From the NCBI RefSeq assembly GCF_001194135.2, contig NC_068988.1:40766087-40798988 (forward strand): DNA of 32,902 nucleotides, in the 5' to 3' direction. The stretch comes from Octopus bimaculoides. Its lineage: Eukaryota. This document shows, piece by piece, positions 4,141 to 32,037 of the stretch. The notes under the pieces are model-generated. The model did not search any database, was not told the DNA's origin, and saw only the letters and a list, made by a program, of their open reading frames with translations. The position numbers and the translations under genes are program-made. How positions within the stretch are numbered: position 1 is the first letter of the stretch; every line of letters begins with the position of its first letter.

Positions 4141-5059
4141 CACATTTGTTCATTAATATAATGTTCGAAGCATGACGGTTATGATCATGTTTCATGTCGT
4201 GACTGTTCGATTTTGTTTGCCTTTTAGACTTAGTCTTGTCAAACTGTATGTTTAACACACCTAATGCTTACTCTATCTGTTATCTGTTGTTGCTGCAGTT
4301 GTTTTTGTTATTGTCTCATTTCTCTTATCATCCCACTTAATCATTGTTTCCATATGCCTTTCCCATTCAGTAAGTTGATGTTGCTTGTATGTCGTTTAAC
4401 CTCACGTCACCCTTAATCTAACAAACTTGTAAGCTGTTGTTTAACTGTAGGTCGGTCCTAATCCAACAAATCTATGATCAATTGTGCTCATTTCTGTTTT
4501 ATTATTATTATTTTATTTTTTGTCTTACTAGTTTCAGTTTAGACTGATANNNNNNNNNNGAACAAAAACGCAATAGAGGGCATTAAAACGTTCGGACAGA
4601 TAGACGATAGAAAGGCGGACAAGAGAAATAACAAGATGGTTCGATCTATTACCCCCAAAAATGTCTAAGCTAAGAGCATTAAACCCCTTCGTTAGAAAGC
4701 TACCGAATGTGTACGGCAACAAAGACAAAAACAAACAAACAAAAGCACGGAGAACATGGTACACAATTACGAATACATACAAGAAATAACAGGCGTCTTT
4801 CGATTGAGAACGAATGAAATTGAGCTGGCGTATATGAAGTGAAAGCCTTAAGGCAGGAACATGGGCGATAGACACAAGAGGTATTGGCTGTGCGATTCAG
4901 GTCAAGAAAGAGAGATCATGGTTGGCCGGACACCGATCATGTGGAAGGAGGAGAGATGGGTGGGGGACAGCGTGATTGAAGGATTAGAAAAAAAAATCAG
5001 AGACAAAGAGAAAGGTACAAGGGAGATAAACGAGTAGGAAATAATGGGAGTTATATCTA

Positions 5060-7372: not shown

Positions 7373-7909
7373 TAACTGTTAACATAATCCACCTTAAGGT
7401 ATGGACGAAGTCAATTTAGCTCTAACCTCCCTAATCTTATAAAAACCAAGTAGCTATTTAATTCGCTATTTGCGCCAAACCACAGGCGTGCCTATGCTTA
7501 CATCTTCGTGAATGCGTGTATGAGCGAGTGTACATGCACCGTACAACCTATGCGAAGCTGATTATACATCCATATCCGTTAAGGGTTATAGTCAATATTT
7601 TATTCGCTGTAATGCATTTTCATTTCTTTTATGCATCTGTAACTTATTATTGATCTTCTATATAAATGGAACTATGTCTTTTAATTTGCTGCCTCTCTTT
7701 ACAGGAACTGAGAATATACATTGCGGAACTGTTATTTTAATGTGTTATATCTATGTATCACGCGAAGAGACATACCTGTGCTGTCGGATGCACCTGAACC
7801 AGTAGTTAAGTATCCTACCCGTGAGGGATTGATGCTAGATGGGTCGAAACAATTGTAGCGATATATTAAAATTCTCGTATCGTCCATCTTCCGTCTCTCA
7901 TTACCGAAA

Positions 7910-7984
<75 letters not shown>

Positions 7985-8111
7985 TTATCTGTGTGTGTAT
8001 ATNNNNNNNNNNNNNNNNNNNNNNNNNNNNNNNNNNNNNNNNNNNNNNNNNNNNNNNNNNNNNNNNNNNNNNNNNNNNNNNNNNNNNNNNNNNNNNNNNN
8101 NNNNNNNNNNN

Positions 8112-8142
<31 letters not shown>

Positions 8143-8150
8143 CACATTAC
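7910..8150. repeat. (TATC)n followed by (TG)/(TA)n spanning an assembly gap
   Basis: Direct reading of the sequence. Confidence 0.9.
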
Positions 8151-8384
8151 ATACACATGCGCACATATATAGAGAGAAAGGGATACATATAAACATACGT
8201 ACATAAATCTATCCATACATCTATATAGATATAGATGTTAATTGGTGTCAAGGGCATTAATAGTTAATATGTACGTAGTAGTTGCCAGGAATGTGTTTAA
8301 TATGCAAATTGGTTTAATCAATTGTGTTACATCGCTAAACTTAGTGGTTATTTAAGTAATGTGATAGTGGTAATTGATGGGTTG

Positions 8385-10399: not shown

Positions 10400-11030
10400 A
10401 ATTCACTCTGCCAGAAATTTGGAAACGACATGCAGTATTACTTGGTATTCACGCCGGACGCTCCAGTGCGAACATATCAGAGTGTTTGTGTGTCAATCTG
10501 AGGACAGTGTAATCTGAGGACATGTACTGTACCGAGAGTGATAAAAATCAAACATCCAGTCAACGTCATGGTGTTTGGAGTGATCACTAGTGATGGCGAC
10601 GTTATGCCTCCATTCATCTTCCCACAGAGCCTCAGAATCTACACGGAGGCCTACATCAACGAGGTAGTACTGCCCTGAGTGACGAGGGTGGCTGCGGGAA
10701 GACCCCATGTCTGGCAGCAAGACTCTGCACCATGCCACACAGGAAAGAGAACCTACACATGTCTGACAGACAATTTCTGCGACCACATCACCCGTAACAT
10801 CTAGACACCTAACTCCCCAGACTGCAACCCCCTTGATTATTATGTGTGGGGTGCAGTTGAGTGAGAGACCAACAAAACTCCTTGTAACACCAAAGATATC
10901 TGGAGTCTGCAGTTGAAGCCAATGGCGATTTTATTGAATAAATTTACTCTTTAGTATTTCAAGATATTTTAATGTAATTTAGTAAATATATCTGTTAAAA
11001 TGAGATATCAGAGTTGTTTTCATTTTCGCG

Positions 11031-11033
<3 letters not shown>
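10400..11033 (+). mobile_element. Internally deleted Tc1/mariner transposon, maT (DD37D) type
   Basis: N-terminal FTLPEIWKRHAVLLGIHAGRSSANISECLCVNLRTV; catalytic part KHPVNVMVFGVITSDG...WQQDSAPCH...PNSPDCNPLDYYVWG. D at 10721 and D at 10835 are separated by 37 codons. Duplicated AATCTGAGGACA near the deletion junction (~10495-10522). Confidence 0.85.
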
Positions 11034-11063
<30 letters not shown>

Positions 11064-11419
11064 NNNNNNNNNNNNNNNNNNNNNNNNNNNNNNNNNNNNN
11101 NNNNNNNNNNNNNNNNNNNNNNNNNNNNNNNNNNNNNNNNNNNNNNNNNNNNNNNNNNNNNNNNNNNNNNNNNNNNNNNNNNNNNNNNNNNNNNNNNNNN
11201 NNNNNNNNNNNNNNNNNNNNNNNNNNNNNNNNNNNNNNNNNNNNNNNNNNNNNNNNNNNNNNNNNNNNNNNNNNNNNNNNNNNNNNNNNTAAGATAATGA
11301 GAGTGAAAAAACTACAGAAGGCTTGTGTTACATGGTTAAAATATATATTTAAATTATGTCAGAAAAATGTTATAAAATATTTTTGGTATATAAACATTGT
11401 ATTTTGAGAAATAACCGGT

Positions 11420-11695
11420 TTCGTGTTGTCTTTTCAAATTTCTCTACTTCATTGTAACGTGTTCGCTCCATAATAGACTGCTTTGACGATCAATGTCATG
11501 CTCATTTCGAAGCATTCTACTAGCATATCCATGCATAGTCTTCTGCATATATAAGCTCATCCTTTCATCTGATTATACGTTGCAGCAGAGTTGTGCAACT
11601 TCTTTGAGCATGTATTCTAGGTTATTAGACAAGGAATGTTGCTCAAGGAGCTGCCTTCCAGCTCTTATGATGTTATCAGCCTCATATATGCAAAC
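11420..11695 (-). mobile_element. Possible post-RT fragment of another R4/Dong-like retroelement
   Basis: Minus-strand translation ...QKTMHGYASRMLRNEHDIDRQSSLLWS resembles the K.LHGQF...ID...S..W region of the 341-2488 element; weak match. Confidence 0.35.
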
Positions 11696-11755
11696 TTGTA
11701 TGTATGTATGTATGTATGTATGTATGTATGTATGCATGTATGTATGTATGTATGT

Positions 11756-12095
11756 CTCATTAAAGGTCTGTGATATGCAGGACACTGACTGGGAGAACAA
11801 TGCCTGTCATCGTCACAGATGGAGGAAGCAGTTTAAGGAGGGGATCGACATTTTTAAGAGAGCACGTATCCAGCATGAAGAACTTAAGCAAGCTGCGCGA
11901 AAGCGCACGACTCGTATAGTGAATGGGGAAAGCTTGGTCTGCAATGTTTGCAGTCGTGTATGCTTGTTAAGAGCAGGGCTCATTAGTCACCAACGGAGCC
12001 GCAAATGCAAAATATAAGCTAGTCCTAGAGCACACAATGTTCCTGAAGGTCGGCAATGGTCTTCTTCGGTCACGAGTGGACGGCCATCATGTATG
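11756..12095 (+). mobile_element. 3' end of an RTE (BovB-like) LINE between (TATG)n tracts
   Basis: LKVCDMQDTDWENNACHRHRWRKQFKEG...VCNVCSRVCLLRAGLISHQR is the RTE C-terminal pattern (W...A.DR..WR...C..C.R.C.SRIGL.SH.R); short 3' UTR ending GGACGGCCATC then (ATGT)n; (TATG)n also at 11697-11755. Confidence 0.8.
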
Positions 12096-12810: not shown

Positions 12811-12964
12811 GGGAAAAAGAGACGGATGTAGCTATAGTTACTATTTTTGTAGGTCGAACTACATATATACATGTTCACACACACACACACACACACATAC
12901 ACATTAAGTAATTCTTTCTAGTATAAGCACAAGACCTGAAATTTGGAGGGAGAGGGATAAACGA

Positions 12965-13178
12965 TTCTTTTCTACTCTAGGCATAAGGCCTGAAATTTTG
13001 GGGGAGGAGGCTAGTCGATTATATCGACCCAGTACGCAACAGGTACTTAATTTATCGACTCGGAAAGGATAAAAGGCAAAGTAGACCTCGGCGGAATTTG
13101 AACTCAGAACATAAAGACAGACGAAATACCGCTAAGCATTTCGCCCGGCGTGCTAACGTTTCTGCCAGCCCGCCGCCT
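12965..13178 (-). mobile_element. tRNA-derived SINE, head + conserved central domain + GCCTTGTGCCTAGAGTAGAAAAGAAT-type tail
   Basis: Minus strand: GGCGGCGGGCTGGCAGAAACGTTAGCACGCC (A box)...GAGTTCAAATTCC (B box)...TTTGCCTTTTATCCTTTCCGAGTCGATAAATTAAGTACC. From memory the central segment resembles the Meta/Sauria-type SINE domain. Extra tail fragment at ~12910-12960; partial copy at 13215-13330. Confidence 0.85.
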
Positions 13179-13523
13179 TGTGGGATAGACGATTACAGTG
13201 ACGCAAGTGTTCAACTGGCCCTTATTTTGTCGATTCCAAAAGGATGCAAGACAAGGTCGGCCTCGACAGAATTTAAACTCAGAGCATAAAGACGGGCGAA
13301 ATACTGCTAAACGCATTCTTCCAGCGTGTTGTTTACATTCTACAGCAGTAATTGTTTTCACATCAATAGACGTCAGTAATTGGTTGAAATCACCGAAATA
13401 CGACAACTTTTAACATGAAATAACTTCGAATGTAAAATTCTTTCTGTTTTATAAGACAAAGTATTTCCCAATCACACGGTTCCGGATACAATCCCACTGC
13501 ATGGCACGTTGGGCAAACACTGG

Positions 13524-14891: not shown

Positions 14892-15879
14892 GATTTCTTT
14901 TATTTGCCATAAGGGAGAAGGATGAGGAGGACAATACAAAGACAGACATAAAGGGTGGGGTTTACATATAATGAAATGATTAAAAAAAGACAAAAGAAAG
15001 AATACACGGTATACACTGAAAGAGATGGGACATGTGCACAGCATATAAAGGTTTAACCCCCCCCCCCCAAAAAAAAAGTAGCAGGGAGGATGTTAGAGAT
15101 GTGGCCCTCTTGATACAGGAAGGCCTCTAGGGATAATTGAGGAGCCCCACTGTCCGAGATTTCCCTGAAACCCCAGGAGCAAGTGCCCTCTCCAATTCCT
15201 TCTCGCCGTCTCACAAGTCTACACTTAGAGAAACACCATCCACTTTTGCTATTTTCACAACTTCACCCACCTTTCAATAAACTCGCTCGAGGACAACACT
15301 TCCCTCTCCACACTCAGTTTCCTTATCAACTGAAACAAGAAGTCAATGAGAGCTCTACCAAAGAGGAATGTATCTGTCCTCATGCCTTTCAGCTTTGTCC
15401 ACCGAGCAACCTCTTTCGCCACTGCCACCAGGCAAAGGAAAACTGCCTTGCCTACCCGACTGAAGGGCGACGGTGTGGTCATCACTACAGACTCGGCCGA
15501 CAGACGGATCCGTCCCACACGTGACAGTAGCTGTTCGACATAAACTCACAAGTCAGTAATGCCCGGACACTGAACAAGAGCGTGCAGAACGGTTTCGTCA
15601 CTCTGAGCGCACCTCGTGCAAGCTCGTCTGACAGCACATCTGTGCCTGTAGAGTTTATATCGAACCGGTAGCACCCACCGGTAGCACCCACCGGTAGCAC
15701 TGCCAGGCCAAGAACATCTGGAAATTATCCATGATAGTTCTGACTGGAAAGTCCTCCGGAACAGACTAGCCAGTTCGCTCACGTCGGCACCCAGATTCTC
15801 CTCGAGAGTGACGTCACACTTCCCCGCCACTAATCCTCTATAAATTTCTAAGCGGAACATCCGTAATCCTATTGCCCGA
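14892..15879 (-). mobile_element. 5'-truncated Tx1/L1-clade LINE: ORF2 C-terminus with zf-RVT-like Cys/His motif and 3' UTR
   Basis: LPVRYKLYRH...RACTRCAQSDETVLHALVQCP...FLCLVAVAKEVARWTKLKG...FIERWV; 3' end CCCTTATGGCAAATAAAAGAAATCA followed by (TTA)n; (TAA)n also at the 5' junction (15880-15892). Confidence 0.8.
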
Positions 15880-15892
15880 CTAATAATAATAA

Positions 15893-16184
15893 CAGTCCCA
15901 AATGATGAAAAAAAATCAAAGGACCTAGCCAATGAATTACAGAGACTATGGAAAGTGCGGGTAAAATGCATCCCAGCAGTAATAGGTGCACTGGGAATTA
16001 TCCCTAAAGATCTGAACAGATGGATGGAGGAAATAGGCGTAAAACCCAGTTTAGTACAACTCAAGGAAACAGTATTATTAGGGATATTTAGGATACTTAG
16101 GAGGGTTCTTAGCATCTAAGGTTACTTGCTGCAGCCTGATGTTATGTTTTTTTCTAACATTCTAATCTGTTGTGTATACATGAA
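15893..16184 (+). mobile_element. R4/Dong-type 3' fragment (distinct subfamily)
   Basis: KSKDLANELQRLWKVRVKCIPAVIGALGIIPKDL...VLLGIFRILRRVLSI* (stop 16117-16119), 3' UTR, then (AAT)n at 16185-16236. Confidence 0.8.
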
Positions 16185-16622: not shown

Positions 16623-16687
<65 letters not shown>

Positions 16688-16689
16688 TA

Positions 16690-16899
16690 ATCCTTTCTGC
16701 TATAGACACAAGGCTTGAAATTTTGCGGGAGGCGAGTAGTCGATTACATCCACCCCCAGTGTTTCACTGGTACTTAATTTATCGACCAAGAAAGGATGAA
16801 AGGTAAAGTCGACCTCGGTGGAATTTGAACTGAGAACGTAAAGACGGACGATATGCCGTTAAGCGTTTTTCCGGTGTGCAAATGATTCTGCCAGCTCGC
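16690..16899 (-). mobile_element. tRNA-derived SINE (family of 12965-13178) whose tail runs into (TTA)n
   Basis: Same head, central domain and tail motifs as 12965-13178. Confidence 0.8.
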
Positions 16900-19790: not shown

Positions 19791-20769
19791 CAGATTTAAG
19801 AAAAGGGAAGAATGCTTTAGATGAAGTAGTTTATTCCAACCGTGAGCAATAACACGGGATGGTTGCGGCTGGAACGTCTTTGATGTAATCTTCCAAATCA
19901 AGGCTGACCTCAGGTTAAGCAACAGCATCGTCAATAGTACAACCGTCACCAACGAACCAGCGAATGAGTCTCTAAGTGGTTGCTCGACATGTTGAAAATA
20001 ACTCCCAAATGATACCCTATTGTCATAAGGAAGAAGGAAGACACATTTGATGATGTAGTCTTGTATACATTGCATGAATGAAAATGCGATGGTCGTGGCT
20101 GGAACGGCTTTCATTATAGAACTCATCAATGAGTGCTAACCTGAGGCCAAATTATAAGACATCTCACACCTATCCCTTCGCCAACACCATCAAACCGCCA
20201 CCGACTTTTATCCCTCTTTTCAATGTATTTATTATTGAAAGTGAACACTCTCAACAAACAGCACTCCAGTAGCAGAATACAATAAAGATTCCGTAGACGA
20301 CACACGACACTCCCTACCGCACACATGCACGCAGGCACACACACGCACACACACACATACTCACACACACACACATACTCACACACAATTTGAACACACC
20401 GTGACCAGCCATTAACAAACCGACTGGCTGCAGGGCATTGCTGTAATCTACGAAGCCAGAACAAATTTTAGATTTCACAAACTCATAAAGAAATAACAAT
20501 TCAATACTTAAAGTAAAATGTAAAGCATCACTCTCACTCCCTCCCTCTCTCCCCTTCTCTCTCTCTCTCTCTCTCTCTACCTCTTTCTTTTGCTTTCACC
20601 TTTCATAGACACATGAAGAGGGACACACTCACACCTTGACATTCATGTACACACTGCATGGTGTACAGTTTATAGACTTTATATTTATGAGGAATCAGTT
20701 AAGGATTCATTCACTCCATTACTTCACGAAGTTTCATGCACATAGGACACGTAATTCATTATTCAACAG

Positions 20770-20945
20770 TTTCTTCTAACTTTCACATGCTTCAGTTATT
20801 GGGTTACAATCATGCTGGAGCATCGCATTGAAGGGTTTATCCAAACTAATGAACTCCAGTACTTATTTGTTTTTTAATGATACTTATTGTATCGGTCTCT
20901 TTTGCAAAACCGCTAGGTTACAGGGACGTAAGCACACCAACACCA
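20770..20945 (-). mobile_element. 3' half of the two-part SINE
   Basis: CATGCTGGAGCATCGCATTGAAGGG...TATCGGTCTCTTTTGCAAAACCGCTAGGTTACAGGGACGTAAGCACACCAACACC. Confidence 0.65.
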
Positions 20946-21234
20946 TCAGACTACCAGAAAATCATGGTTACACCAATGCTTCAACTCTTTATTTGTACTG
21001 ATTTGTAAATATTCAATTGTATTGTATAATGTTCAGCATGCATATTAGTGCAGACGAACATTATTCTACATTGAATTTATTATTACACGAGGAAGGCGGA
21101 CAAGTGGTTAATAAAGGATGACAAGTGGTTAAATAAATATATTCACCCCTCATACCTCCTGACTTTTTATGGTATATACATACATATATACATATACATA
21201 TGTGTGTGTGTGCGTGTGTGTGTGTGCATGTGTG

Positions 21235-21390
21235 GGTTTGTCCACCACTGCCGCTTGACAATTGATATTGGTGCGCATATGTCACCCTAAGATAGCGGTT
21301 GGCAAATGAGACTGAAAAAATAAGTACCAGGCTTTAAAAAACAATAAGTCCTGGGGTCGATTTGTTCGACTAAAACCCTTCAAGGTAGCT
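21235..21390 (+). mobile_element. 3' half of the two-part SINE, preceded by a (TG)n tract
   Basis: GTTTGTCCACCACTGCCGCTTGACAA...AATAAGTACCAGGC...CTGGGGTCGATTTGTTCGACTAAAACCCTTCAAGG. Confidence 0.7.
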
Positions 21391-22540
21391 ACGCTTGTGC
21401 CACTTTTAAGATTAAAGTGTATGAGTTGAGTGAGATTTAGCTGCTGTTTCTCGCAGGTCCAGTAACTCCATAGTATCTCTCTCATTGACTCATTTCGGTT
21501 TTCAGTACAGATAAGGTCTTGCAAATTGACTGATCGATGGCTTGAGTAACTTATCTAATGAGTGACGTTCTTGCTATGTAGGAAAACGAAAATCCTTTTT
21601 GATTCAAATACTAATTTTAATTGCTTGAGCCATAAAGCTAACAAAACGCGTGAAACATTTTACTGTTGTTTTAATGGTGCAGAATATTAAAATATGCTGT
21701 AAGGGGTCCATGCAAACCTCTGCTGTTACTTTTTAAAGAATACAATCAGTTCATATGCCTTGTAAAACATCAGAAGTTTTTTTTTTTTTCTTTTTTTTTT
21801 AACCTAGGCACATTATATGAAAATCCGTCGTTTCATGAAAATATATCAAATACATTATAGAAAATAAATCACTGAAGTTACTTACTCAGAGAGGCCACCT
21901 GTAAAAGAAAAGGAACAAGAGCTAATCTAATGTTAGCATTAGTGTATTGTGCATCAAAAGTTCAGTTATAAATATTTATGCTATGAGAAAACGACATTAG
22001 CTGATAGATTACTATTACTTAAAATAGTTAAGTATGAGAAACAATTTCGAAACATTGCGGTTTTATTAGAACTCCTCAGTGAAAATGTTGACTTTATGAT
22101 GCTTGTCACAAAAGATATCCTAAAAGTAGTTATCAAATCCATTAGCACTAATTTCTGAGCTCAAAATCTGTAGGATTTTTTGTTGTTGTTAGTTTGTTAT
22201 TAAAGGATGTTATTTAAAAAAAAATAGTTATAAAAAATAAGTAGGAATATATACAAGTTAATTTCATCACTACAGCATATCATTTGAATAATTAAAGAAA
22301 AAAAGAATTATGAAAGTGGCAAAATTATTAGGAAAATACACTAACAGAAAAAGTAAATTGACTGACAAAATAATTAGTGACTTTGAATTCAAACGCCATC
22401 GAAGTCAACTTCAATTTTCTTCCTTCTGGTGTTGATAAAACAAGCAACAATCAGGAATTATGTTTGATGTAATCAACTGTTCTCTACATACAAAGCATGT
22501 GACTATTTGAGCATACTAGAAATCAACATTAGTGACTTAA

Positions 22541-22738
22541 TGCTTCTCATTTTGGCACAAGGCCAACAATTTCGGGAGAGTGGGTAAATCGATTACATCG
22601 ACTACAGTGCTCAAGTGGTACTTATTTTATCGACCCCGAAACGATGAAAGGCAAAGTCGATCTTGGCAGAATTTGAATTCATAACGTATAGACAAACGAA
22701 ATGCCGCTAAGCATTTTGCCTGGCATGCTAACGATTCT
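22541..22738 (-). mobile_element. tRNA-derived SINE interrupted in its A-box by the 22739-24454 element
   Basis: Tail, central domain and B box present; the head starts at AGAATCGTTAGCATGCC, and the first ~14 nt (GGCGGCGAGCTGGC) are not adjacent. Confidence 0.85.
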
Positions 22739-24454
22739 AATTTTTTTTATTACCCATTACGGGGCGAACATAGAGGGCAAAATACACATGTGGGGACATA
22801 CAAACAGAGAAAAAAATAGAACCAACGTATGAAAAAATGACAGGAAAAGTGAAATGAAAAATAGAATGAAGCCACTCCCCCCACTTCATAGCAGCTTCAT
22901 TTATACCTTTTAAACTTCGTTCCCGCTAGAATATCGATTCCAAATTCTTCCACCACTTCCTCATATGTCATATACTGTGGTAATACGTCCCAATCCATTT
23001 TACCCCACAACATCTATAGCCGCTTTTAAATCTGTTACTTTTTCTCTGTTTATCCGAGCAAAACGTGCAACAGTGCTATCCCTTTATGTTGTCAAAACTC
23101 ATTGTTCCAACTGTTTCAAAGTGTTTCCAAGATAACACTTCTTTACACAGTTTTTCATAGAGTCATCATACATTACTGCGTGGCATATTTTCTTTTTTCG
23201 TTTTTCTTTTTTTGTCTGGTGGAGGGAGTTTAGGAGTTCTTGTCTGTTTGTACATTTTTCTGTGTCAGACAGGTGATGATCAGGTTTGGTGTCTGTAGGG
23301 GGAGGGTGGGTCGATGAGGGTGTGGGTGGGTGTTGGGTGGTTATGGGGTTTAATATTTTTCTTTTTCACTTGTCCCTTTTTCCTATTGTTTCCCATTCGC
23401 TGTCTGTTTCTTTCTTCTCTACTTCTGTTGATGTTTTTTCTTCCTCTTTATTTTCTTGCTCTCTCTGGCGCTTTCCCTCTTGTATCTCCTCCGTCTTTTT
23501 GGTCGGTGAAGGACAGACCGCCCTGATGTGGCCCTTTAGGCCACATCTAAAGCATCGACGGATTTTGCCCTCCACCCTGATCCTCATTATCACGTTGTCC
23601 ATAATTATCGTTTCAGTAATGTTTTCTAGGGTTTCGGTTGAACCTTGAATAATCATGTCCAGTATCTGTCCCTTCCATATAGCACTTTGCGTTTTTTAAT
23701 CCAGGAGAACCGCTATGTTGTCCTCATTTCCCAGAAGGACAGCCACATCTATTTCTGGCGGAATTCCTTCCACCCTAACTCTGGTCGCACGTTATCCGCG
23801 GTAAGTGGGCAAAAGCACCACTTCCTCACTCTTAATGGAAGTTGCTGCGTGCTTTTTTGCTGTTGCCGCGTCCTTGAATCTCACCTCCACTACTCCGACC
23901 TTAGTACCTCTCGCAAGGTATACAACTTCATGCCACATTGGTCTTAACGCTTTCTCTATTTAACCCGTGGTCATGACGTCAATTTTTCCTTCAATTATTG
24001 AAAATGTTTTGTACAAAATTGTTCTATCTTTCGTATTATTAAGCGTCTCTTGCGGTAGTTGGATTGGGTGACAATTTAACGTCAGATCTATCCCGACTTG
24101 ATAAATTTTTGTAATTTTCAAATTCACCAATATCAATATCATTTTCCTGGCACTTTGCCTTGTCCGCAAAGTTTCTCTTTTCTTCATTTAATTTTTCGTC
24201 CATTTTCTTGGCCGTTTTCAAAAATTCTTCCTCTGAAGACGACATATCTGAAAAGCTGAAGTCTTCTTCAGACATTCTTTTCACTAAGCCGACCCTCTTC
24301 TATGAGGAGGGGAAGAACAAACAAACTGCTGCAAAGCAGTGCAAAAACAATTAACGAAGCGTCTCAAACACTGATGCAAAAACAAACAAAATAATGATAA
24401 CACTCTGAAAATACCGTCCAAAATTAATCAAGTACACCGTGAATAACACAGGAA
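22739..24454 (-). mobile_element. ORF1-only (HAL1-like) non-LTR retroposon, ~1.7 kb, poly(A)-tailed, with 16-bp TSD
   Basis: TSD GCATGCTAACGATTCT (22723-22738) / GCGTGCTAACGATTCT (24455-24470); AATAAAAAAAA at the 3' end; ~180-nt 5' UTR; disrupted ORF1 from 24275 to ~22897; no EN or RT motifs seen. Confidence 0.8.
22897..24275 (-). pseudogene. Gag/ORF1p-like protein (acidic N-terminus, RRM-like region, CCHC zinc knuckle, P/T-rich linker, C-terminal domain), broken by stops and frameshifts
   Basis: MSEEDFSFSD...; RTILYKTFS...RGTKVGVVEVRFKDAATAKKH...TRVRVEGIPPEID...RIRVEGKIRRCFRCGLKGHIRAVCP (C-X2-C-X4-H-X4-C); ends ...DWDVLPQYMTYEEVVEEFGIDILAGTKFKRYK*. Confidence 0.75.
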
Positions 24455-24470
24455 GCGTGCTAACGATTCT

Positions 24471-24702
24471 TATTTCTTTATTGCCCACAAGGGGCTAAAC
24501 ACAGAGGGGACAAACGAGGACAGACAAAGAGATTAAGTCGATTACATCGACCCCAGTGCGTAACTGGTACTTAATTTATCGACCCCGAAAGGATGAAAGG
24601 CAAAATTGACCTCGACGGAATTTGAACTCAGAACGTAACGGCAGACGAAATACCGCTAAGTATTTCAGCCAGCGTGCTAACGTTTCTGCCAGCTCGCCGC
24701 CT
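24471..24702 (-). mobile_element. Full-length tRNA-derived SINE with an alternative, Tx1-like 3' tail
   Basis: Head GGCGGCGAGCTGGCAGAAACGTTAGCACGC, B box GAGTTCAAATTCC, central domain, then tail CTTTGTCTGTCCTCGTTTGTCCCCTCTGTGTTTAGCCCCTTGTGGGCAATAAAGAAATA. Confidence 0.9.
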
Positions 24703-25054
24703 CAAACAATGACTTTATATTATATGACATAGGTAGTACAGATTTTTTTAATAACAATCAAATGTTGCGAAAGGGTTTCAATTTTCAGTGTAAATAATTA
24801 TATTTTATCTATGCAGCTAGTACTCCTCATAAAACTGGTCAGTCATGAAAATAACTTATTCAGCTTTATAGATTTGAATTGTTCAGCAGAATTGTTAGAA
24901 CCTTGCGATGTTTAGCTACAAGCCTTTATATTCTAGCTTCAAGTTCCACTGAGGTCAACTTTGCATTTCATAAAATAATGTAGATACCTAATACAGAGAT
25001 TGGTTTATATTCCTAGAATGCATCTACGATATAATACAAGAGATAAGTTTTCAA

Positions 25055-25200
25055 GCTTTGACACAATGTCAGCAGTTTTTGAAGGAAGAAGTCAATTACA
25101 TCGACCCCGTACTTAACTGGTACTTTATTGTGTCGTCCCCGAAATGATGGCAGAAAAGTTGACCTCAGTAGTATTTGAACTCAGAACGTAACGACGAACA
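25055..25200 (-). mobile_element. Degenerate partial copy of the tRNA SINE
   Basis: ATTACATCGACCCCGTACTTAACTGGTAC...TTGACCTCAGTAGTATTTGAACTCAGAACGTAACG. Confidence 0.7.
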
Positions 25201-25872
25201 AAATTAACCTCGATTTCTTCGAAAATCTCATTGCCACCAACTCTTTTCGCGACACACCTCAACAGCTGCTAAATCTACGCCAGATCTCACTCTACCGTTT
25301 TAAAAGTGAAAACTCATTGAATAATGTTGACTTGAGTACATTATTAGCTGAAAAAAAAAAAAAACAGGTTGATCATAGTTGTAAAATATTCTCTCATAGA
25401 CATGCTGAATCACAGCGGATCTGGAGCTAAGTAACAGCAACAAAAACATTCTCAGTTTTCGTAGCAACACCAAGCATGCACCCCCACCCTATGTGTGCGT
25501 GTGTGTGTGTATGCATGCATATATCGTGTTTCTATACTTTATTGTTTTCCAGACGGTTAAGCACATTTTGACAGAAATCTAGATGCAAATTTACACGAGT
25601 GCAGAGTTTGTAAAGAAATTCATCGGCTGACTAGTGTTTCTCTGTCGTATTGTGCTGGTATGTGCAAGTTTTCCTGTGTTACGGATCGTCGTATTTTTTT
25701 AAGAGTGTTACAGTCAATTATTATTTTGTGCAACATTGGTGGCATCCTAGTTACGTGATTAATGTTCTTTTGTGTAGAATATGCTTTGAAGGAACGTGTG
25801 CCTTGAATGAATTTGCAACTTGCGCATTGAGTGAGGTTATCAGCTGTTGCTGTTATTCTTTGGATGCAGGAA

Positions 25873-26290
25873 GGCGGCGTCTTGACAGAATCTTTACTAC
25901 ACCGGTCAAAATGCTTAGTGATATTTCGTTCGTTTTTATGTTCTGAATTCAAATTCCACCGAAGCTGACCTTTCGAGGTCGTTAAAATAAGTACCAGTTA
26001 CTTACCCCTCACCCGGAATTGCTGACCTCAAGCCAAAATTTGAAATCATTATTTGGTTGCAGGAGAGTGGAGAATTGGCAGAATCGTTAGCGCATCGGAC
26101 AAAAATCCTTAGCGGCAAGTCTTCCGACTCTTTAAGTTTTCATTTCAATTTCTCCTGTCGAAGTTAACTTTGCCTTTCATTCCACTAGAGCTGATAAAAT
26201 AAAATGCATGTCAAGCACTGGGGGTTGGGGTGATTGACTTGTCTCGCGCCTCAAAATTCCTAACCTAGTGCCAAAATTAGAACCATTTGG
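25873..26290 (+). mobile_element. Two tandem degenerate tRNA SINE copies (25873-26047 and ~26065-26285)
   Basis: Heads GGCGGCGTCTTGACAGAATC and TTGGCAGAATCGTTAGCGCATCGGAC; tails GCCAAAATTTGAAATC and GTGCCAAAATTAGAACC. Confidence 0.7.
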
Positions 26291-26524
26291 TTCTATGTCT
26301 GCCGTGATATAACAGACTTTTGATTAAAGGTATACCAGACTTGATCAACTTGTTCTTTGCCACTCACCCACCCCTTGGCATGGAGTAACGTTGTACAACG
26401 TTATTCGATGTGACCTTCTTTTCTAAGCCGGGAGGACGTGATTTTATGAAAATATAGCAAACCGAACAACTACGTATATCTTCCCTCACTAGCTCTAACT
26501 CAACATCAGTTCAGGGTTTATATA

Positions 26525-26700
26525 GTTCTTTTCTACTCTAGGCACTAGGCCCGAAATTTCGGGGAGGGGGCCAGTCGATTAGATCAACTCCAGTACGCAA
26601 CTGGTACTTAATTTATCGACCCCGAAAGGATGAAAGGCAAAGTCGATCTCGGCGGAATAAATAATCTTTTCTATTCTAGGCACAAGGCTCGAAATTCCAA
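26525..26700 (-). mobile_element. 5'-truncated tRNA SINE plus an adjacent second tail fragment
   Basis: CTACTCTAGGCACTAGGCCCGAAATT...ATCGACCCCGAAAGGATGAAAGGCAAAGTCGATCTCGGCGGAAT, then CTATTCTAGGCACAAGGCTCGAAATT. Confidence 0.8.
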
Positions 26701-26743
26701 GTGAAGGTAATTTAACTTTTAAGACATTGTTTTATATGGATGT

Positions 26744-27064
26744 GAAGGCGCATTGCTTAGTGGTTAGGGCATTCGGCTCACGATCGCAAGGACGTGAGTT
26801 CAATTCCCGGCGAAGCGTTGTGACCTTGAGCAAGACACTTTATTTCACGATGCTCCAGTCCACTCAGCTGGCAAAAATGAATAGTATCTGTATTTCAAAG
26901 GGCCAGCCTTGTCACACCCTGTGTCACGTTGAATCTCCCTGAGAACTACGTTAAAGGTACATGTGTCTGTGGAGTGGCTCAGTCACTTGTACGTTAATTT
27001 CACGAGCAAGCTGTTCCGTTGAACGTATCAGCTGGGACCCTCGTCGTCGTAACGAACGGAGTGC
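26744..27064 (+). mobile_element. Full-length tRNA-derived CORE-like SINE
   Basis: A box TTGCTTAGTGGTTAG, B box GAGTTCAATTCC, CORE-like TGTGACCTTGAGCAAGACACTT, tail ...GACCCTCGTCGTCGTAACGAACGGAGTGC. Confidence 0.75.
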
Positions 27065-27613
27065 TCCTTGCATATGGGTACTAAGGCTTTGCACGTATAG
27101 TGATTTTTCAAGGAATTTTCGAGTTTCGCTCGAAAATCATCCATGGGTGCTGTTGTGCTTATGTGACATACGAAATTAGCTTCATTACTTATTTTAGGGT
27201 TTAATCCTGCTGTGCATTTCTTTGAGTTGTTATTTTCAATCCAAACCTCGTTAAGCATTGCGAATTAAATTTGGCTGTAGCGAAGTTTGATAAAATTGGT
27301 TCCAGTCTTTTGTGAGGTCGGCTTAATCTATTGTCTAATTTTAAACTACTGCACGAACCTCGTTTGCTTCAAGCGGTTTGTAGTCTGTTGCAAGTGCTGA
27401 GGCCAGACCTCCGTCCTGAGAATAAACACCTGTCTTTTTCTCACCAGTTTCGGAGGTCATAAAAATAGTCACGGGTGCCGCCCTTCCACCTTTTATTAAG
27501 TCATGAGAACAAGCAAGCGTATTTAATTGATGCGCAGTGAATATATTTTGGTCTGGTTTAGTATTCGTAAGTATATAAGTACATATGTGTGAATATATGG
27601 ATGCGTATCTATA

Positions 27614-28780
27614 CAGAAATGTCTTAACTTACGACGGTAATTGGTACTAAGACATGAGACTTAACTCAAAAACACACGTAACAGGTAAAAACATTTAAAA
27701 ATCCATTGCGATTCAGTAAAAAAAAAATTTCCGGTTACTATAAACATTTAAATAGGAATATAAAATTATAAAAGATAATGTTAAGAAAAATGCATAAAAG
27801 AACCAAAAATAAAAGAAAATATATAATGAATATAACAAACAAACATTTACTTAATTGGTGAAATCGATATGCTTAAATGGGTAGAAATGGAGACTGAATG
27901 AGAAGCTGAGATTACGATGTTTTCATTGGAGTGGAAGAAATCGATTTGTCATCAGCCATTTCCAATTCAACTTTCAGTGTGCAGCGATAACTTGTTTATA
28001 GTGCTTTGAACGGTTTTAATTTTCTTGTTATCCACAGTAAAATAAGGAACATAAGATAAGCATTGTAAACAACCTCTATTTTTCAAGTAAAGCGTTCAGC
28101 ATTAAAATCTTTCTCCTCGAAAAGGGCTAGTGATTTCTTCCTATACACAAAAACTTGTTGGTTTTGTTGATGGTGAAGCGTCTCGGTTCTGGTTCCATTT
28201 TCTGTGCCTCCTCTTGTTGTTGCTCTTCATGAAGCTCTGTCAACTCTTGTGAGCGGTTGCATATCATCATCAGTCAATGCGTCCAAATCCTCCTCCTCTA
28301 AATCTCTGTTCATTTCTTTTAACAACGCCACCAATTTTTAGTTTACATCAGAAATGAGGGAAGCCTTGAAATCGTTCACAAATTGGGGGCACAGTTTCTT
28401 CCAAACGGCATTCACACACGTTTCTTATTCATCCTTATATGCCAAATTGATATCAAGAATTGTCTTGCAAATATCATAATTCTTCCCAAGATCACGGAGT
28501 CTAATATTTTCCTCCATTTCTGTTGCTGCTACACCCTGCTTGAGTACACACTTTTCTTTTTTTGTCTTTGGTAACATTTGGTAGTAATATTTGAAGTTAG
28601 AAATGATAGCCTGGTCCAAATATTACAATAGAGAAGTGGTGCTAGAAGATAGGCATACCTCGACGATGTAAGGATAAATGTGAACGACGTTTTGCAGATG
28701 GCTTGGGGCGTTATCTAAAATAAAATAGCTCTTGAACGGAATTTGCTTTGTGGTACCCGACTGATGACTGCAGGAACAAA
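27614..28780 (-). mobile_element. pogo/Tigger transposon remnant (DDE C-terminal half + one TIR)
   Basis: Minus strand: FVPAV...(fs)LDNAPSHLQ...STTSLL*YLDQAIISNFKYYY...*CVNAVWKKLCPQFVNDF; TIR-like TA|CAGAAATGTCTTAACTTACGAC at 27612-27635. Confidence 0.75.
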
Positions 28781-29240
28781 GTTGGCGGCTAGTTCAACCA
28801 ATGTACATGGATTTGCAGAGGAAATGCTTGAGACCGTCCACGAGGTTAGCGGAGGTGGAGTTGAAGGAATCCCTGATAAAGAAAGTTCAATTGTAGGGAC
28901 AGGTAATAATGGTGGTATCAGTAATGAAAAAGCAGTATACCATCAGAGACAGGAGAAAGGGAGGGATCAATCTTAAAGACGGTGTTGGAAGAAGAGTTAC
29001 ATAGGAGGAGGTTACGGACATAACAAGGATGGTTAAAGCGGTGGGTGCAAGAGACTGTTGACCCGACTGGATTGCAGGCGATGGTTGAAACGAATTACGG
29101 ACTGCTGAATAGATAAGGTGGTAAAATAGCCGATGAGTGAAGAGGAAAGATGGTTACTTTGAGAGCTGCGCATGTTGTAATGCTGTATTGCAGTTGATTT
29201 TCTGGATGAAGGTTATTTTGACTTTGGGGACGAGCGTCAG
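28781..29240 (-). mobile_element. Second Penelope-like fragment (linker + start of GIY-YIG), a different lineage from 6357-6868
   Basis: Minus strand: ...RNLLLCNSS...FFIRDSFNSTSANLVDGLKHFLCKSMYIG*TSRQL matches the PLE pattern F.IRDSF.C.S.NL.Y...C..C...YIGET.R.L. Confidence 0.55.
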
Positions 29241-29366
29241 CGCATATGTTGATATTACTAATATTTATAAGTTTATAGTTTACAAGTGATCGCCGTCTAA
29301 TGACCAAAGAAAATAGTCTAATACTGCGGAATGTAAGCCCTCGACGGAGAAAAGTAGGGTTTTCTT

Positions 29367-29432
29367 ACGCATGAGACTCGAACCCACAACTCTTTGTTTT
29401 CACAAGTGTGTAACCATTAGACCAACGTATCC
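29367..29432 (-). pseudogene. tRNA-like pseudogene, copy 1 (anticodon loop deleted)
   Basis: GATACGTTGGTCTAATGGTTACACACTTGTGAAAACAAAGAGTTGTGGGTTCGAGTCTCATGCGT: A box, B box and T arm present. Confidence 0.6.
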
Positions 29433-29667
29433 CTAGCTTCTTTCGTCAGGTTTAAGAACTGTAATTGGCTCATAGTGTTATTTTGTAAACAAACATCATA
29501 TGCGTTTCTGGCGTTAGGTTTTTTTTCGTAAGCAGTGTCGATTTTCACAATTCTGTAAATATCATTAATAAGCTTAAAGATTATAAGCAATCACCGAGTA
29601 ATGAGCAAAGAAAATAGCCTAATATTTGAGCATATAAGCCCTCCAAGGAAAAAAAAAACGAAGGGCA

Positions 29668-29742
29668 TCGATACGCATGAGACTCGAACCCACAACTCTA
29701 TGTTTTCGCGACAGGTGCGTTACCGTTACACCAACAGCATCC
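29668..29742 (-). pseudogene. tRNA-like pseudogene, copy 2 (tentatively Thr-derived)
   Basis: GATGCTGTTGGTGTAACGGTAACGCACCTGTCGCGAAAACATAGAGTTGTGGGTTCGAGTCTCATGCGTATC; D stem GTGT/ACGC, T stem GTGGG/CTCAT; T-run about 10 nt downstream. Confidence 0.6.
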
Positions 29743-29984
29743 TTGGTTTCTTGCTGCCAGATTTAAGAACTATAATTTGTTCATAGTGTTGTTTTGTAAC
29801 CAAATAGCATGTGCGTTTCCTGCTTTTTTCTGTCGAGTACTTATATGCCTAAATATTGGACTATTTTCTTTAGTCATTAAACGGTAGTCGCTTATAAATA
29901 CTATTAACATTATTTACAGAATTGCAAAAATCGATACTGCTTACCAAAAAGTCATCGCAGGAAACGCACATAATGCTTCTATAT

Positions 29985-30033
<49 letters not shown>

Positions 30034-31204: not shown

Positions 31205-32037
31205 CTAGCTGAATACCCAGTATTGCCCGGTTTATTGTTGTTCATATTCAGATTAGTAAACAATAAATGTGAAGATAGATATTTTTCTTATAATTATTTT
31301 TAAATATTTATATTTTATTTTTAAAAATTCAAATCGTAATGATAATAGAATTTAGAACAGAAAATCAGTCAATTTGAAGTACCTCGGGGTAAACAATATT
31401 CAATGTGTAACTTTTTGTTGGTGTTCAAATGAAAAAACTGTTGCTACTTCCAACTCGTGAACAAGACACATAGAGCTGGCCGTGGGAGAAGCATATAGCA
31501 GAGAGATCAAATCCAACTACATTGAGAGATTGACCCTGAGATTTGTTGATTGAAATAGCAAAACTTATTTTGACGGGAAACTGAAGCCTCTTAAATTCAA
31601 ATGGAACATCTGTAGGTATGAGAGGAAGTTTTGGAATGAAAACATTTTCCCCTTTGTGACAATCTGTAATGATTGTTGCCTGTAGGACACAGGGCTTCAT
31701 GGAAGTAACAATTAAGCGTGTTCCATTGCACAGGTGTTGTGGGTCAAGATTCTCAAGCGACATAATGGGAGCACCCAGCTTTAGTGTAGATGTGTGTGTG
31801 TGTGTTTAATAACGTGCCTAACAAACATGCAAACACACACACATACACACTTGCCAAAATTTGAAATCGATATGCATAGCACTGCACAATGCTAAGATAA
31901 ATACATGAAAGTCACTTATTAGTCCCAAACAAACATAGGTACATAAATGAGGCGGTGTAAATCTGTCAAAATTTATTTTCTGGTGGTAAAATTCACTCAT
32001 ATCTGACTAATGCAAACCACTATAAAGAGAACGTAGA
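31205..32037 (-). mobile_element. Non-autonomous Helitron (~830 bp) retaining the PIF1-like helicase C-terminus
   Basis: 3' end CCGGGCAATACTGGGTATTCAG-CTAG|T (hairpin-like + CTAG) at 31205; putative 5' end A|TCTACGTTCTCTTTATA at 32037 (less certain); helicase ORF inside. Confidence 0.7.
31425..31763 (-). pseudogene. Helitron Rep/Hel PIF1-family helicase C-terminal fragment
   Basis: NLDPQHLCNGTRLIV...FIPKLPLIPTDVPFEFKRLQFPVKISFAISINKSQGQSLNVVG...FSHGQLYVSCSRV: helicase motifs V and VI. Confidence 0.92.

What the first reader, a model, noticed from the sequence alone, without database searches (positions are those of the whole stretch)
24455..24702. A second retroposon (SINE) ends at the same A-box nucleotide: possible self-targeting of the SINE family
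Seen in sequence: on the minus strand, the SINE tail (...GGGCAATAAAGAAATA) is directly followed by AGAATCGTTAGCACGC, and so is the poly(A) of the ORF1-only element. A lone insertion of the ORF1 element would leave GGCGGCGAGCTGGC upstream of the TSD; a SINE tail is there instead. Inference: two independent TPRT events share one 3' junction, implying an endonuclease that nicks the tRNA-derived A-box. Because the SINE carries that site itself, the family would create its own safe landing sites and nested SINE dimers.
Basis: partly seen in the sequence, partly recalled or inferred. Interest (0 to 1): 0.75.

Follow-up and report, generated by a model that had tools for sequence, protein, structure and literature searches.

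The report
Octopus SINE that inserts into SINE heads
In this octopus genome, a young short retroposon family and a related LINE-like element repeatedly land at one exact nucleotide inside the head of older copies of the same SINE superfamily, so the repeat family serves as its own preferred landing site and builds tandem SINE dimers.

Summary
On the minus strand a full SINE (24701..24471) ends ...GGGCAATAAAGAAATA and abuts AGAATCGTTAGCACGC (24470..24455). A decayed ORF1-bearing LINE derivative follows (24454..22739). Its A-rich end abuts AGAATCGTTAGCATGC (22738..22723, 15/16 identical), and the rest of an older SINE comes after that. The 16-mer is nt 15-30 of the SINE head.

- About 26-35% of roughly 20,000-30,000 copies of this tail continue into the 16-mer and then SINE core.
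- Seen from the target side, about 11% of SINE heads carry this tail exactly between nt 14 and 15.
- About a fifth to two-fifths of roughly 14 copies of the homologous LINE-like tail also abut the 16-mer.
- The other common SINE tail ends in random AT-rich flanks.
- The junction is present in four octopus species labels.

Best explanation (about 0.6): site-preferential target-primed reverse transcription into SINE heads, using a 4-nt AGAA overlap and homology-assisted 5' joining.

Not shown: the endonuclease specificity, the LINE clade, and what share of dimers amplified as whole units.

Novelty: a new variant of known target-specific LINE/SINE systems.

The parts
24702..24718 (-). 5' flank ATAAAGTCATTGTTTGA. 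Candidate target-site duplication of the original (outer) SINE insertion.
   Evidence: It aligns with ATTAAGTCACTAATGTTGA immediately after the SINE-B tail. Local score is 17 against a null of 12.1 +/- 3.3, P = 0.09 without the positional constraint. Suggestive only.
24688..24701 (-). SINE head nt 1-14 (H, GGCGGCGAGCTGGC). Under the nested model this is the head of the older target SINE, or a hybrid with SINE-A.
   Evidence: In about 22,700 loose-end reads H is what normally precedes the 16-mer.
24672..24687 (-). T1: first copy of the 16-mer (AGAAACGTTAGCACGC), SINE nt 15-30.
   Evidence: It carries the A variant at its nt 5, found in 78% of SINE heads genome-wide.
24536..24671 (-). SINE-A core (shared SINE body).
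   Evidence: 82-89% identical to other SINE copies in the window. Depth about 3,600 at >=95% identity in about 0.7x of reads.
24471..24535 (-). tail_A: LINE-derived 3' tail ...TCTCTTTGTCTGTCC...GCCCCTTGTGGGCAATAAAGAAATA. Its canonical end runs 4 nt further (AGAA, 24470..24467).
   Evidence: Homologous to the ORF1 element's last ~67 nt (score 33 against a null of 14.2 +/- 2.5, 0/2000 shuffles), and not to the other SINE tail. About 19,000 read depth. Copies with non-SINE flanks mostly end after 24467 (148-163 unitigs) or 24470 (84-86 unitigs).
24455..24470 (-). T2: second copy of the 16-mer (AGAATCGTTAGCACGC). It is both the 3' junction of SINE-A and the 5' target-site duplication of the ORF1 element.
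   Evidence: The junction is spanned by a unique-depth contig. Depth falls from about 3,300 to about 110 at 24455/24454.
22739..24454 (-). Decayed ORF1-bearing non-LTR element with no RT. It has ORF1 pieces with a CCHC knuckle (CFRCGLKGHIRAVC), about 630 nt of 3' region, and an AATAAA + A-rich end.
   Evidence: zf-CCHC is below the Pfam cut-off here (14.7 bits) but is matched by 7 of 16 relatives. 84% identical to an Octopus bimaculoides model, A0A0L8H3A6. About 2-9 copies of the body and about 14 of the tail.
22723..22738 (-). T3: third copy of the 16-mer (AGAATCGTTAGCATGC). It is the 3' target-site duplication of the ORF1 element and continues into SINE-B.
   Evidence: Unique-depth contigs span 22712-22908.
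22542..22722 (-). SINE-B: nt 31 to the end of an older SINE with the other (B-type) tail (...GGCCTTGTGCCAAAATGAGAAGC).
   Evidence: 80-81% identical to other copies. It has more CpG decay than SINE-A. Depth is about 240 against about 3,600 for SINE-A at >=95% identity.
22523..22541 (-). 3' flank ATTAAGTCACTAATGTTGA. Candidate partner of the 5' flank duplication.

Best explanation
An older SINE (H + 16-mer + SINE-B) was hit twice at the same phosphodiester bond, between SINE nt 14 and 15. Both hits used one non-LTR retrotransposition machinery.

That machinery belongs to a low-copy LINE family whose 3' tail (...GCCCC.T..TGGG.AATAAA + A-rich) is shared by two elements:
- the ORF1 element in this window;
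- the very abundant SINE-A subfamily, which is therefore its non-autonomous passenger.

Proposed steps:
1. The bottom strand of the target is nicked opposite GGC|AGAA.
2. The exposed ...TTCT-3' end anneals to the terminal AGAA of the tail RNA and primes reverse transcription.
3. The top strand is cut 16-17 nt downstream, at nt 30|31. The 16-mer therefore becomes the target-site duplication, and the site is regenerated on both sides of the insert.
4. When the incoming RNA is itself a SINE, the 3' end of its cDNA is complementary to the target's own nt 1-30. Second-strand synthesis is then primed by homology and no extra head is left.

The product is a full SINE-A followed by a SINE that lacks its first 14 nt, which is the structure at 24701..24455.

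Shown:
- the recurrent exact junction genome-wide;
- the tail homology;
- the TSD of the ORF1 element;
- the specificity for this tail.

Inferred:
- the nick position within AGAA;
- sequence recognition by the endonuclease;
- the homology-assisted 5' joining;
- the order of the two hits.
For: 1.. Summed X21 depth is 14,258 at the last tail bases, 9,803 on AGAA, 5,050 on the next 4 nt of the 16-mer, 3,278 at its end and 112 beyond. About 26-35% of tail_A copies therefore continue into the 16-mer. X22 gives the same picture. Loose ends beyond 24455 have the SINE-core consensus CGGGCGAAATGCTTAGCGGTATTTCGTCTG (98-121 unitigs, agreement 0.74). Other flanks are random AT-rich.

2. One search, target side. 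2,867 reads carry tail_A (TATTTCTTTATTGCCCACAAGGGGCTAAAC, agreement 0.76) immediately upstream of nt 15 of a consensus-like SINE head. About 22,700 carry the normal head, so about 11% of heads are occupied. Almost all occupants are this tail, although it makes up at most about 40% of SINE tails by depth.

3.. The best-supported joint (30 reads) is 16-mer + 1 nt followed by a new head. This is the structure of a full-length SINE flanked by a 17-nt duplication of the site.

4. This locus. The ORF1 element is flanked by T2 and T3, a DNA-level 16-bp TSD starting at nt 15.

5.. By contig depth, about 15-40% of roughly 14 copies of the LINE-like tail continue into the 16-mer, a range that overlaps the 26-35% seen for SINE-A. 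At least 2-3 other loci show this with different downstream SINE sequence (17-27% different over 30 nt, against about 14% in the tail).

6.. The A/T variant at nt 5 of the 16-mer is 75/25 in tail-preceded copies and 78/22 in SINE heads in general. Targets therefore look like a random sample of heads.

7.. The B-type tail ends in random AT-rich flanks (104 unitigs, agreement 0.40).

8.. tail_A is homologous to the ORF1 element's tail. The B tail is not.

9.. The same junction is present in runs of three other species labels (122-204 unitigs each).

10. Precedent: Tx1-clade LINEs and their SINE (SINEU-3) insert preferentially into one site of another transposon (PMC4494074).
Against: - Only about 1% as many reads show the classical TSD-flanked full-length structure (30 against 2,867). 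For nearly all dimers the 5' side gives no independent proof of a separate insertion.
- No autonomous LINE, ORF2 or endonuclease was found. Specificity of the nick is therefore unproven.
- The AGAA overlap means annealing could account for part of the preference. However, the B tail also ends in AGAA and is not found there.
- The age difference between SINE-A and SINE-B is modest on the crude window consensus (8.6% against 12.5%).
- An orthologous empty site could not be recovered.
- In other species a 13-nt SINE-derived extension (nt 49-61) travels with a tail variant. Flanking SINE sequence can therefore be co-amplified with the tail.
Confidence: 0.6

Rival explanations
1. Dimer as a unit. 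One or a few founder dimers (SINE-A joined to a head-less SINE) arose once. Pol III transcribed them from the left monomer and they were retrotransposed as whole dimers. The thousands of identical junctions are then inherited, not independent hits.
For: The junction is invariant in position. A second head-plus-16-mer is almost always absent. The whole composite here may be flanked by one TSD. In other species a tail variant carries 13 nt of SINE-derived sequence with it.
Against: The A/T variant in the 16-mer of the right monomers matches the background frequency of all heads, 75/25 against 78/22. It is not fixed. This model does not explain why about 15-40% of the unrelated-body LINE-like tails also abut the 16-mer. 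It also does not explain the ORF1 element's TSD at the same bond or the TSD-type joints. Here the right monomer is more decayed than the left.
Confidence: 0.2
2. RNA-level template jump. SINE RNAs are cleaved in loops of the tRNA-like head. A reverse transcriptase copying the 3' fragment reaches its 5' end at nt 15, then jumps to the 3' end of a tail_A RNA using AGAA microhomology. A dimer is made in a single integration event, with no DNA target specificity.
For: A second recurrent junction lies at nt 48|49, next to the loop of a predicted 13-bp hairpin spanning nt 31-60. Nt 14|15 lies in the D-loop-like segment. The model explains the missing head and a single outer TSD. Template jumping by non-LTR RTs is established biochemistry (own knowledge: R2).
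Against: It cannot produce the 16-bp duplication flanking the ORF1 element without three jumps, one of them onto a 16-nt fragment. The upstream partner is almost only tail_A, although other SINE RNAs ending in AGAA are at least as abundant. The right monomer here has the B tail, so a different RT would have had to start the reaction.
Confidence: 0.1
3. Ordinary tail targeting at this locus. The SINE-A|SINE-B dimer existed first. The ORF1 element then inserted at the 3' edge of SINE-A's A-rich tail (AAATAAGAA), as L1 and Alu do with older Alu tails. The shared junction would reflect an AT-rich nick preference, not recognition of the head sequence.
For: The junction sequence GAAATA|AGAA is A-rich. 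Non-SINE flanks of tail_A are AT-rich. Upstream of the ORF1 element's TSD is a tail, not a head.
Against: It leaves the genome-wide tail_A|16-mer junction itself unexplained. About 26-35% of copies sit at one exact nucleotide of a GC-containing 16-mer. The opposite order of events (ORF1 element first, SINE-A second) fits the sequence equally well.
Confidence: 0.07
4. Local duplication, unequal recombination between neighbouring SINEs, or mis-assembly produced the three 16-mers.
For: Three SINE-derived 16-mers lie within 2 kb. The window contains assembly gaps elsewhere.
Against: Both junctions are covered by unique-depth contigs of independent runs. The same junction occurs thousands of times and in several species. 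Crossing-over between the 16-mers would not give the observed order.
Confidence: 0.03

Closest known systems
Target-preferring Tx1-clade LINEs with a passenger SINE. Examples: Tx1L into the Tx1D transposon in Xenopus; Tx1-Mar LINEs and SINEU-3 into one site of Mariner-N4_AMi in crocodilians (PMC4494074).
   Same: A LINE family and the SINE that shares its 3' tail both insert, in one orientation, at a defined position of another interspersed repeat. The preference is strong but not absolute. The LINE has an A-rich or polyadenylated end and makes TSDs.
   Different: Here the target is the head of the SINE's own superfamily, so each insertion brings a new target and also duplicates the old one. 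Clade membership is unknown because no RT or endonuclease was recovered.
Alu/L1 insertion into the A-rich tails and linkers of older Alus (own knowledge: Jurka 1997; Levy et al. 2010).
   Same: A SINE family supplies preferred target sites for further copies of itself and forms tandem arrays.
   Different: In Alu this follows from the loose TTTT/AA preference of the L1 endonuclease and falls in poly(A). Here the site is one bond inside a GC-containing 16-mer in the Pol III promoter region of the head.
Small-RNA-gene-specific non-LTR elements. Examples: Keno in U2 snRNA genes, Mutsu in 5S rDNA, R2 in 28S rDNA and its SINE passengers (PMC4494074, PMC3706591, PMC5035012).
   Same: Integration at a fixed nucleotide of a multicopy Pol III- or Pol I-type sequence.
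   Different: Those targets are functional host gene arrays and specificity is near-absolute. Here the target is a dispersed retroposon and about two thirds of insertions go elsewhere.
Dimeric SINEs such as Alu, Twin, or the shrew-mole dimeric SINE (PMC13023118).
   Same: Two Pol III-type monomers joined head to tail.
   Different: Those dimers are fixed fusions that amplify as units. Here the right monomers appear to be a sample of pre-existing heads, and the left monomer also exists abundantly on its own.

Membership tests
tRNA-derived SINE (SINE2) | Head recognisably derived from a tRNA, with Pol III A and B boxes | tested here: inconclusive
   ARAGORN finds no tRNA in the window. Rfam gives no match at E<=1 in 22400-24800. 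By eye only: an A-box-like TGGCAGAAACG at nt 11-21 and a B-box-like GAGTTCAAATTCC. The MFE fold is not a cloverleaf.
tRNA-derived SINE (SINE2) | 3' tail shared with a partner LINE | tested here: met
   tail_A aligns with the last ~67 nt of the ORF1 element (score 33 against 14.2 +/- 2.5, 0/2000 shuffles).
tRNA-derived SINE (SINE2) | Short, non-coding, very high copy number, dispersed with variable flanks | tested here: met
   231 nt. Depth about 19,000 in about 0.7x of reads. Hundreds of unitigs have unrelated AT-rich flanks.
Target-specific or target-preferring non-LTR retrotransposon system | Independent copies joined at the same nucleotide and in the same orientation of a defined target sequence, far above chance | tested here: met
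   26-35% of tail_A copies, and 2,867 target-side reads at one position. About 15-40% of LINE-like tails. The control tail is negative.
Target-specific or target-preferring non-LTR retrotransposon system | Target-site duplication made of target sequence | tested here: met
   T2/T3 flank the ORF1 element, 15/16 identical. 30 reads show a 17-nt duplication around full-length SINEs.
Target-specific or target-preferring non-LTR retrotransposon system | Element-encoded endonuclease that cleaves the target sequence specifically | not testable with these tools
   No ORF2 or endonuclease of this family was recovered. Relatives of ORF1 carry no RT or EN domain.
Tx1 / L1-type LINE clade | RT/APE phylogenetic placement in the clade | not testable with these tools
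   Only ORF1 remnants with one CCHC knuckle and an AATAAA + A-rich end are present. L1-Tx1 families are reported active in Octopus vulgaris (PMC13282606), but no link to this element was shown.
Dimeric SINE amplifying as a unit | Fixed right monomer and junction inherited from a master copy | tested here: inconclusive
   The junction position is fixed. However, the variant in the right monomer's 16-mer is 75/25, like the background 78/22. The identity of right-monomer tails genome-wide could not be read.

The most novel reading that the evidence does not exclude
A LINE/SINE pair in octopuses integrates site-specifically into the promoter-region head of its own SINE superfamily. The 16-bp target is duplicated at every insertion, and each new SINE brings a further copy. 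This would be a self-renewing 'safe harbour' strategy that also silences or decapitates the targeted copy. It would be maintained across several Octopus species and would account for thousands of SINE dimers.
Probability: 0.5. Interest if true: 0.75.

Novelty: new variant of a known kind. Interest (0 to 1): 0.62.

Why it matters
Octopus genomes are rich in SINEs, which have been credited with roles in genome restructuring. How these elements choose sites is essentially undescribed.

A SINE subfamily that sends about a third of its insertions into one nucleotide of other SINE heads would have several consequences:
- It would explain a large class of SINE dimers that repeat annotators merge or mis-split.
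- It would show a retroposon lineage limiting damage to the host by parasitising its own relatives.
- It would show how insertion removes the first 14 nt (part of the Pol III promoter region) from the targeted copy. That is a form of competition between SINE subfamilies.
- It would point to an uncharacterised sequence-preferring LINE integration machinery, which could be isolated and tested.

I found no description of this in the octopus repeat papers I searched.

Tried and rejected
- **ARAGORN and Rfam on the SINE**. No tRNA match, so the tRNA origin is not confirmed here.
- **Pfam on ORF1 pieces and the 3' region**. Only a sub-threshold CCHC knuckle.
- **Word-indexed protein search**. One hit, an O. 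bimaculoides model that is itself frameshifted. Its encoding contig is not on record, so no extra genomic loci could be fetched.
- **Exhaustive HMMER search with ORF1**. 288 relatives. The long ones are chimeric gene models (Helitron, VWA, astacin, LDLa) with no RT or EN. A profile search against the PDB and a Pfam scan of the relatives gave only zinc knuckles. The LINE clade stays unresolved.
- **Age comparison of SINE-A and SINE-B from the nine window copies**. The consensus is too noisy to be decisive.
- **TSD of the whole composite**. Suggestive, P about 0.09.
- **Search for an orthologous empty site in other species**. The unique flank is not recovered at >=85% identity, so there is no answer.
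- **Fetching SINE copies through SINE-encoded pseudo-ORFs.** Considered and dropped. Copies followed by the 16-mer have an in-frame stop and no start codon, so the sample would be biased, and the search is expensive.
- **Palindromic 30-mer AGGTTCGTCCATCGATCGATGGACGAACCT in X21/X22 loose ends.** I read this as a proximity-ligation bridge and ignored it.

Full report
**What is in the sequence.**
Read on the minus strand, the region has this order:
- flank ...ATAAAGTCATTGTTTGA;
- a complete 231-nt SINE (SINE-A, 24701..24471);
- a 16-mer, AGAATCGTTAGCACGC (T2, 24470..24455);
- a 1,716-nt decayed non-LTR element carrying only ORF1 remnants (24454..22739);
- the 16-mer again with one CpG transition, AGAATCGTTAGCATGC (T3, 22738..22723);
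- the remainder of a second SINE with a different 3' tail (SINE-B, to about 22542).

SINE-A starts with GGCGGCGAGCTGGC (H), followed by AGAAACGTTAGCACGC (T1). The 16-mer is therefore nt 15-30 of the SINE head. SINE-B has the 16-mer and everything after it but lacks H.

The 16-mer with up to 3 mismatches occurs six times in the window against 0.11 expected, always in SINE heads. The SINE-A tail occurs once.

The finding is accurate apart from three details. T3 has a single mismatch to T2. The element's A-run ends in TT. The SINE starts at 24701.

Both junctions are covered by unique-depth contigs of independent public runs (X6, 24405-24478; X1 and X2, 22712-22908), so this is not an assembly artefact.

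**What the parts are.**
The window holds about nine copies of one SINE superfamily. Most carry a 'B-type' tail (...GGCCTTGTGCCTAGAGTAGAAAAGAA). SINE-A has another tail (tail_A, about 65 nt).

Tail_A is homologous to the last ~67 nt of the ORF1 element (score 33 against 14.2 +/- 2.5 in shuffles). It is unrelated to the B tail. SINE-A is therefore the passenger of the LINE family to which the ORF1 element belongs.

The element's ORF1 is broken by stops and a frameshift and carries one CCHC knuckle. Its closest relative is an Octopus bimaculoides protein model (84% identity), which places the window in an Octopus genome. No RT or endonuclease could be linked to it, so the LINE clade is unknown.

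The 'tRNA-derived A-box' label is not confirmed by tRNA models. It rests on A- and B-box-like motifs. Nt 14|15 lies inside the A-box-like TGGC|AGAAACG.

**The genome-wide test: tail side.**
I approximated it by laying raw reads and unitigs of public runs on short stretches of the locus.

On 24431-24530 at >=90% identity, summed X21 depth is:

| Position | Depth |
|---|---|
| Inside tail_A | about 19,000 |
| Last 4 tail bases | 14,258 |
| AGAA | 9,803 |
| Next 4 bases of the 16-mer | 5,050 |
| Last 4 bases of the 16-mer | 3,278 |
| Immediately beyond | 112 |

X22 gives the same picture. Thus 26-35% of tail_A copies continue through the 16-mer.

Beyond it the reads go on as SINE core (consensus CGGGCGAAATGCTTAGCGGTATTTCGTCTG, 98-121 unitigs, agreement 0.74).

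The remaining copies have unrelated AT-rich flanks that begin after 24467 (148-163 unitigs) or 24470 (84-86 unitigs). The canonical tail therefore ends ...AAATAAGAA, and its last four bases coincide with the first four of the 16-mer.

**The genome-wide test: target side.**
I laid reads on a consensus-like head, 13105-13200. 2,867 reads have tail_A (agreement 0.76) starting exactly upstream of nt 15. About 22,700 have the normal head. So about 11% of heads are occupied.

With about 0.7x of the genome sampled, this corresponds to several thousand dimers among roughly 20,000-30,000 SINE-A copies. The genome size comes from the literature and the coverage is my estimate.

**Control.**
B-type tails end at one place and are followed by random AT-rich sequence (104 unitigs, agreement 0.40). 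The partner seen at nt 14|15 is almost purely tail_A, although other tails make up most SINEs.

**Independent insertions or inherited junctions?**
Five results favour independent, DNA-level hits.
1. The ORF1 element here is flanked by T2 and T3. This is a 16-bp target-site duplication whose left edge is the same bond, so at least this event was a nick at nt 14|15 in DNA.
2. The best-supported joint at SINE heads (30 reads) is 16-mer + 1 nt followed by a fresh head. This is a full-length SINE bracketed by a 17-nt duplication of the site.
3. Of about 14 copies of the LINE-like tail, roughly a fifth to two-fifths by contig depth continue into the 16-mer. At least 2-3 such loci have downstream SINE sequence that differs from this locus by more than their tails do. 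The proportion is similar to SINE-A's, as expected if one machinery serves both.
4. The A/T polymorphism at nt 5 of the 16-mer is 75/25 in tail-preceded copies and 78/22 in heads generally. This is what sampling of pre-existing heads predicts and not what a single master dimer predicts.
5. At this locus SINE-B looks older than SINE-A. It has more CpG decay and 15-fold fewer reads at >=95% identity. This evidence is weak.

Against: the classical TSD-flanked structure is about 100 times rarer than the tail|16-mer junction.

I explain that rarity by homology-assisted second-strand priming. The 3' end of a SINE cDNA is complementary to the target's own nt 1-30, so the top-strand end cut at nt 30|31 can anneal and prime. 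That leaves H-16mer-core_A-tail_A-16mer-core_B, exactly as seen. This step is inferred, not shown.

The outer flanks of the composite resemble each other at the right places (ATAAAGTCATTGTTTGA and ATTAAGTCACTAATGTTGA). That fits H and SINE-B being one original insertion, but the match is only suggestive.

**Rivals.**
- **Dimers amplifying as units (0.2).** This probably contributes something. Pol III should read through tail_A, which has no T4 run. In other species a tail variant carries 13 nt of SINE-derived sequence with it.
- **An RNA template jump at cleaved SINE RNAs (0.1).** The second junction at nt 48|49, beside the loop of a predicted hairpin, makes this attractive. It cannot make the ORF1 element's TSD, and it does not explain the exclusivity for tail_A.
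- **Simple tail targeting (0.07).** This could explain why the ORF1 element sits next to tail_A here. It does not explain the genome-wide junction.
- **Local recombination or mis-assembly.** Excluded.

**Other species.**
Runs under three further species labels contain tail_A and the same junction. There are 122-204 unitigs with the SINE-core continuation, and 10-27% of tail depth continues into the 16-mer. The phenomenon is therefore not peculiar to one assembly or individual.

An orthologous empty site for this locus could not be recovered.

**Comparison with what is known.**
The closest parallel is the Tx1 clade. Tx1L inserts into the Tx1D transposon. In crocodilians, Tx1-Mar LINEs and their passenger SINEU-3 insert preferentially into one site of Mariner-N4_AMi (PMC4494074).

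Alu-into-Alu-tail insertion is a looser analogue. Elements specific for small-RNA genes (Keno, Mutsu, R2) share the fixed-nucleotide integration.

What differs here is that the preferred target is the head of the SINE's own superfamily. Every insertion both imports a new target and duplicates the old one.

The octopus repeat literature I could search says nothing on this. L1-Tx1, CR1, RTE and Dong-R4 LINEs are reported as recently active in O. vulgaris (PMC13282606), but I could not assign this element to any of them.

**Verdict.**
The mechanism is partly shown (recurrent exact junction, TSD, tail specificity) and partly inferred (endonuclease recognition, AGAA annealing, homology-assisted 5' joining).

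It is a new variant of a known kind, of solid interest to transposon biologists, and directly testable on a complete assembly.

Noticed in passing
window 24641-24654 (SINE nt 49-61), seen in runs X15, X17, X20 and weakly in X1/X3/X14: There is a second recurrent junction. A tail_A variant (...GGGTAGTAAAGAAATA) is directly followed by GGTATTTCGTCTG, which is SINE nt 49-61 and the 3' arm of a predicted hairpin. It is seen in 331-1,187 unitigs in three other species labels and is rare in organism A. After the 13 nt the flank is often AT-rich, as if the 13 nt had become part of the tail.
   Followed up: partly
SINE consensus nt 31-60 (window 24671-24642 in SINE-A): A 13-bp RNA hairpin with G-U pairs is predicted (CGGGCGAAAUGCU / GGUAUUUCGUCUG). 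Its base coincides with the right edge (nt 30|31) of the 16-bp target-site duplication. The whole-head fold is not significant (z = -1.0).
   Followed up: no
window 12915-13345, minus strand: A B-tail SINE (13177..~12960) sits inside the tail of another SINE (13328..13187), with a short TATCCC-type duplication. The interrupted tail resumes at about 12958. B-type SINEs therefore nest too, but at a different place and not at nt 14|15.
   Followed up: partly
reads of runs X21/X22 (not the window): The perfect 30-nt palindrome AGGTTCGTCCATCGATCGATGGACGAACCT recurs as a loose end at many unrelated positions. It is most likely the bridge or ligation junction of a proximity-ligation library. Chimeric reads are therefore expected in these runs.
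   Followed up: no
window 4534-4875, 7839-8192, 11000-11407: ORF translations contain long runs of X, meaning N-gaps in the assembly, next to simple repeats.
   Followed up: no
window 31425-31763 (-), 449-913 (+), 15546-16115 (-), 11493-12017 (+): Other transposon debris is present: a PIF1/Helitron-type helicase C-terminus (SINKSQGQSL...), a reverse-transcriptase fragment (...FQGDCLSPLIF...), a LINE ORF2 C-terminal Cys-rich fragment, and a C2H2-like tail. None shares the tail studied here.
   Followed up: no
protein P0001 (UniProt A0A0L8H3A6, Octopus bimaculoides): This predicted 'uncharacterized protein' is a gene model built on another copy of the same ORF1 element. It runs out of frame after ...RVEGIRPE relative to the intact ORF1 reading.
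   Followed up: partly
run X14 versus X17 (both labelled organism B): At this locus X14 has a depth profile nearly identical to organism A's X1 (52.4 against 52.3 on the ORF1-element 5' end; 27% against 29% tail-to-16-mer ratio). X17 differs (12%). The species label of X14 may not match its content.
   Followed up: no
window 16640-16700, minus strand: A long (ATT)n microsatellite starts directly at the 3' end of the SINE at 16899..16707. It may have grown from the SINE's A/T-rich end.
   Followed up: no
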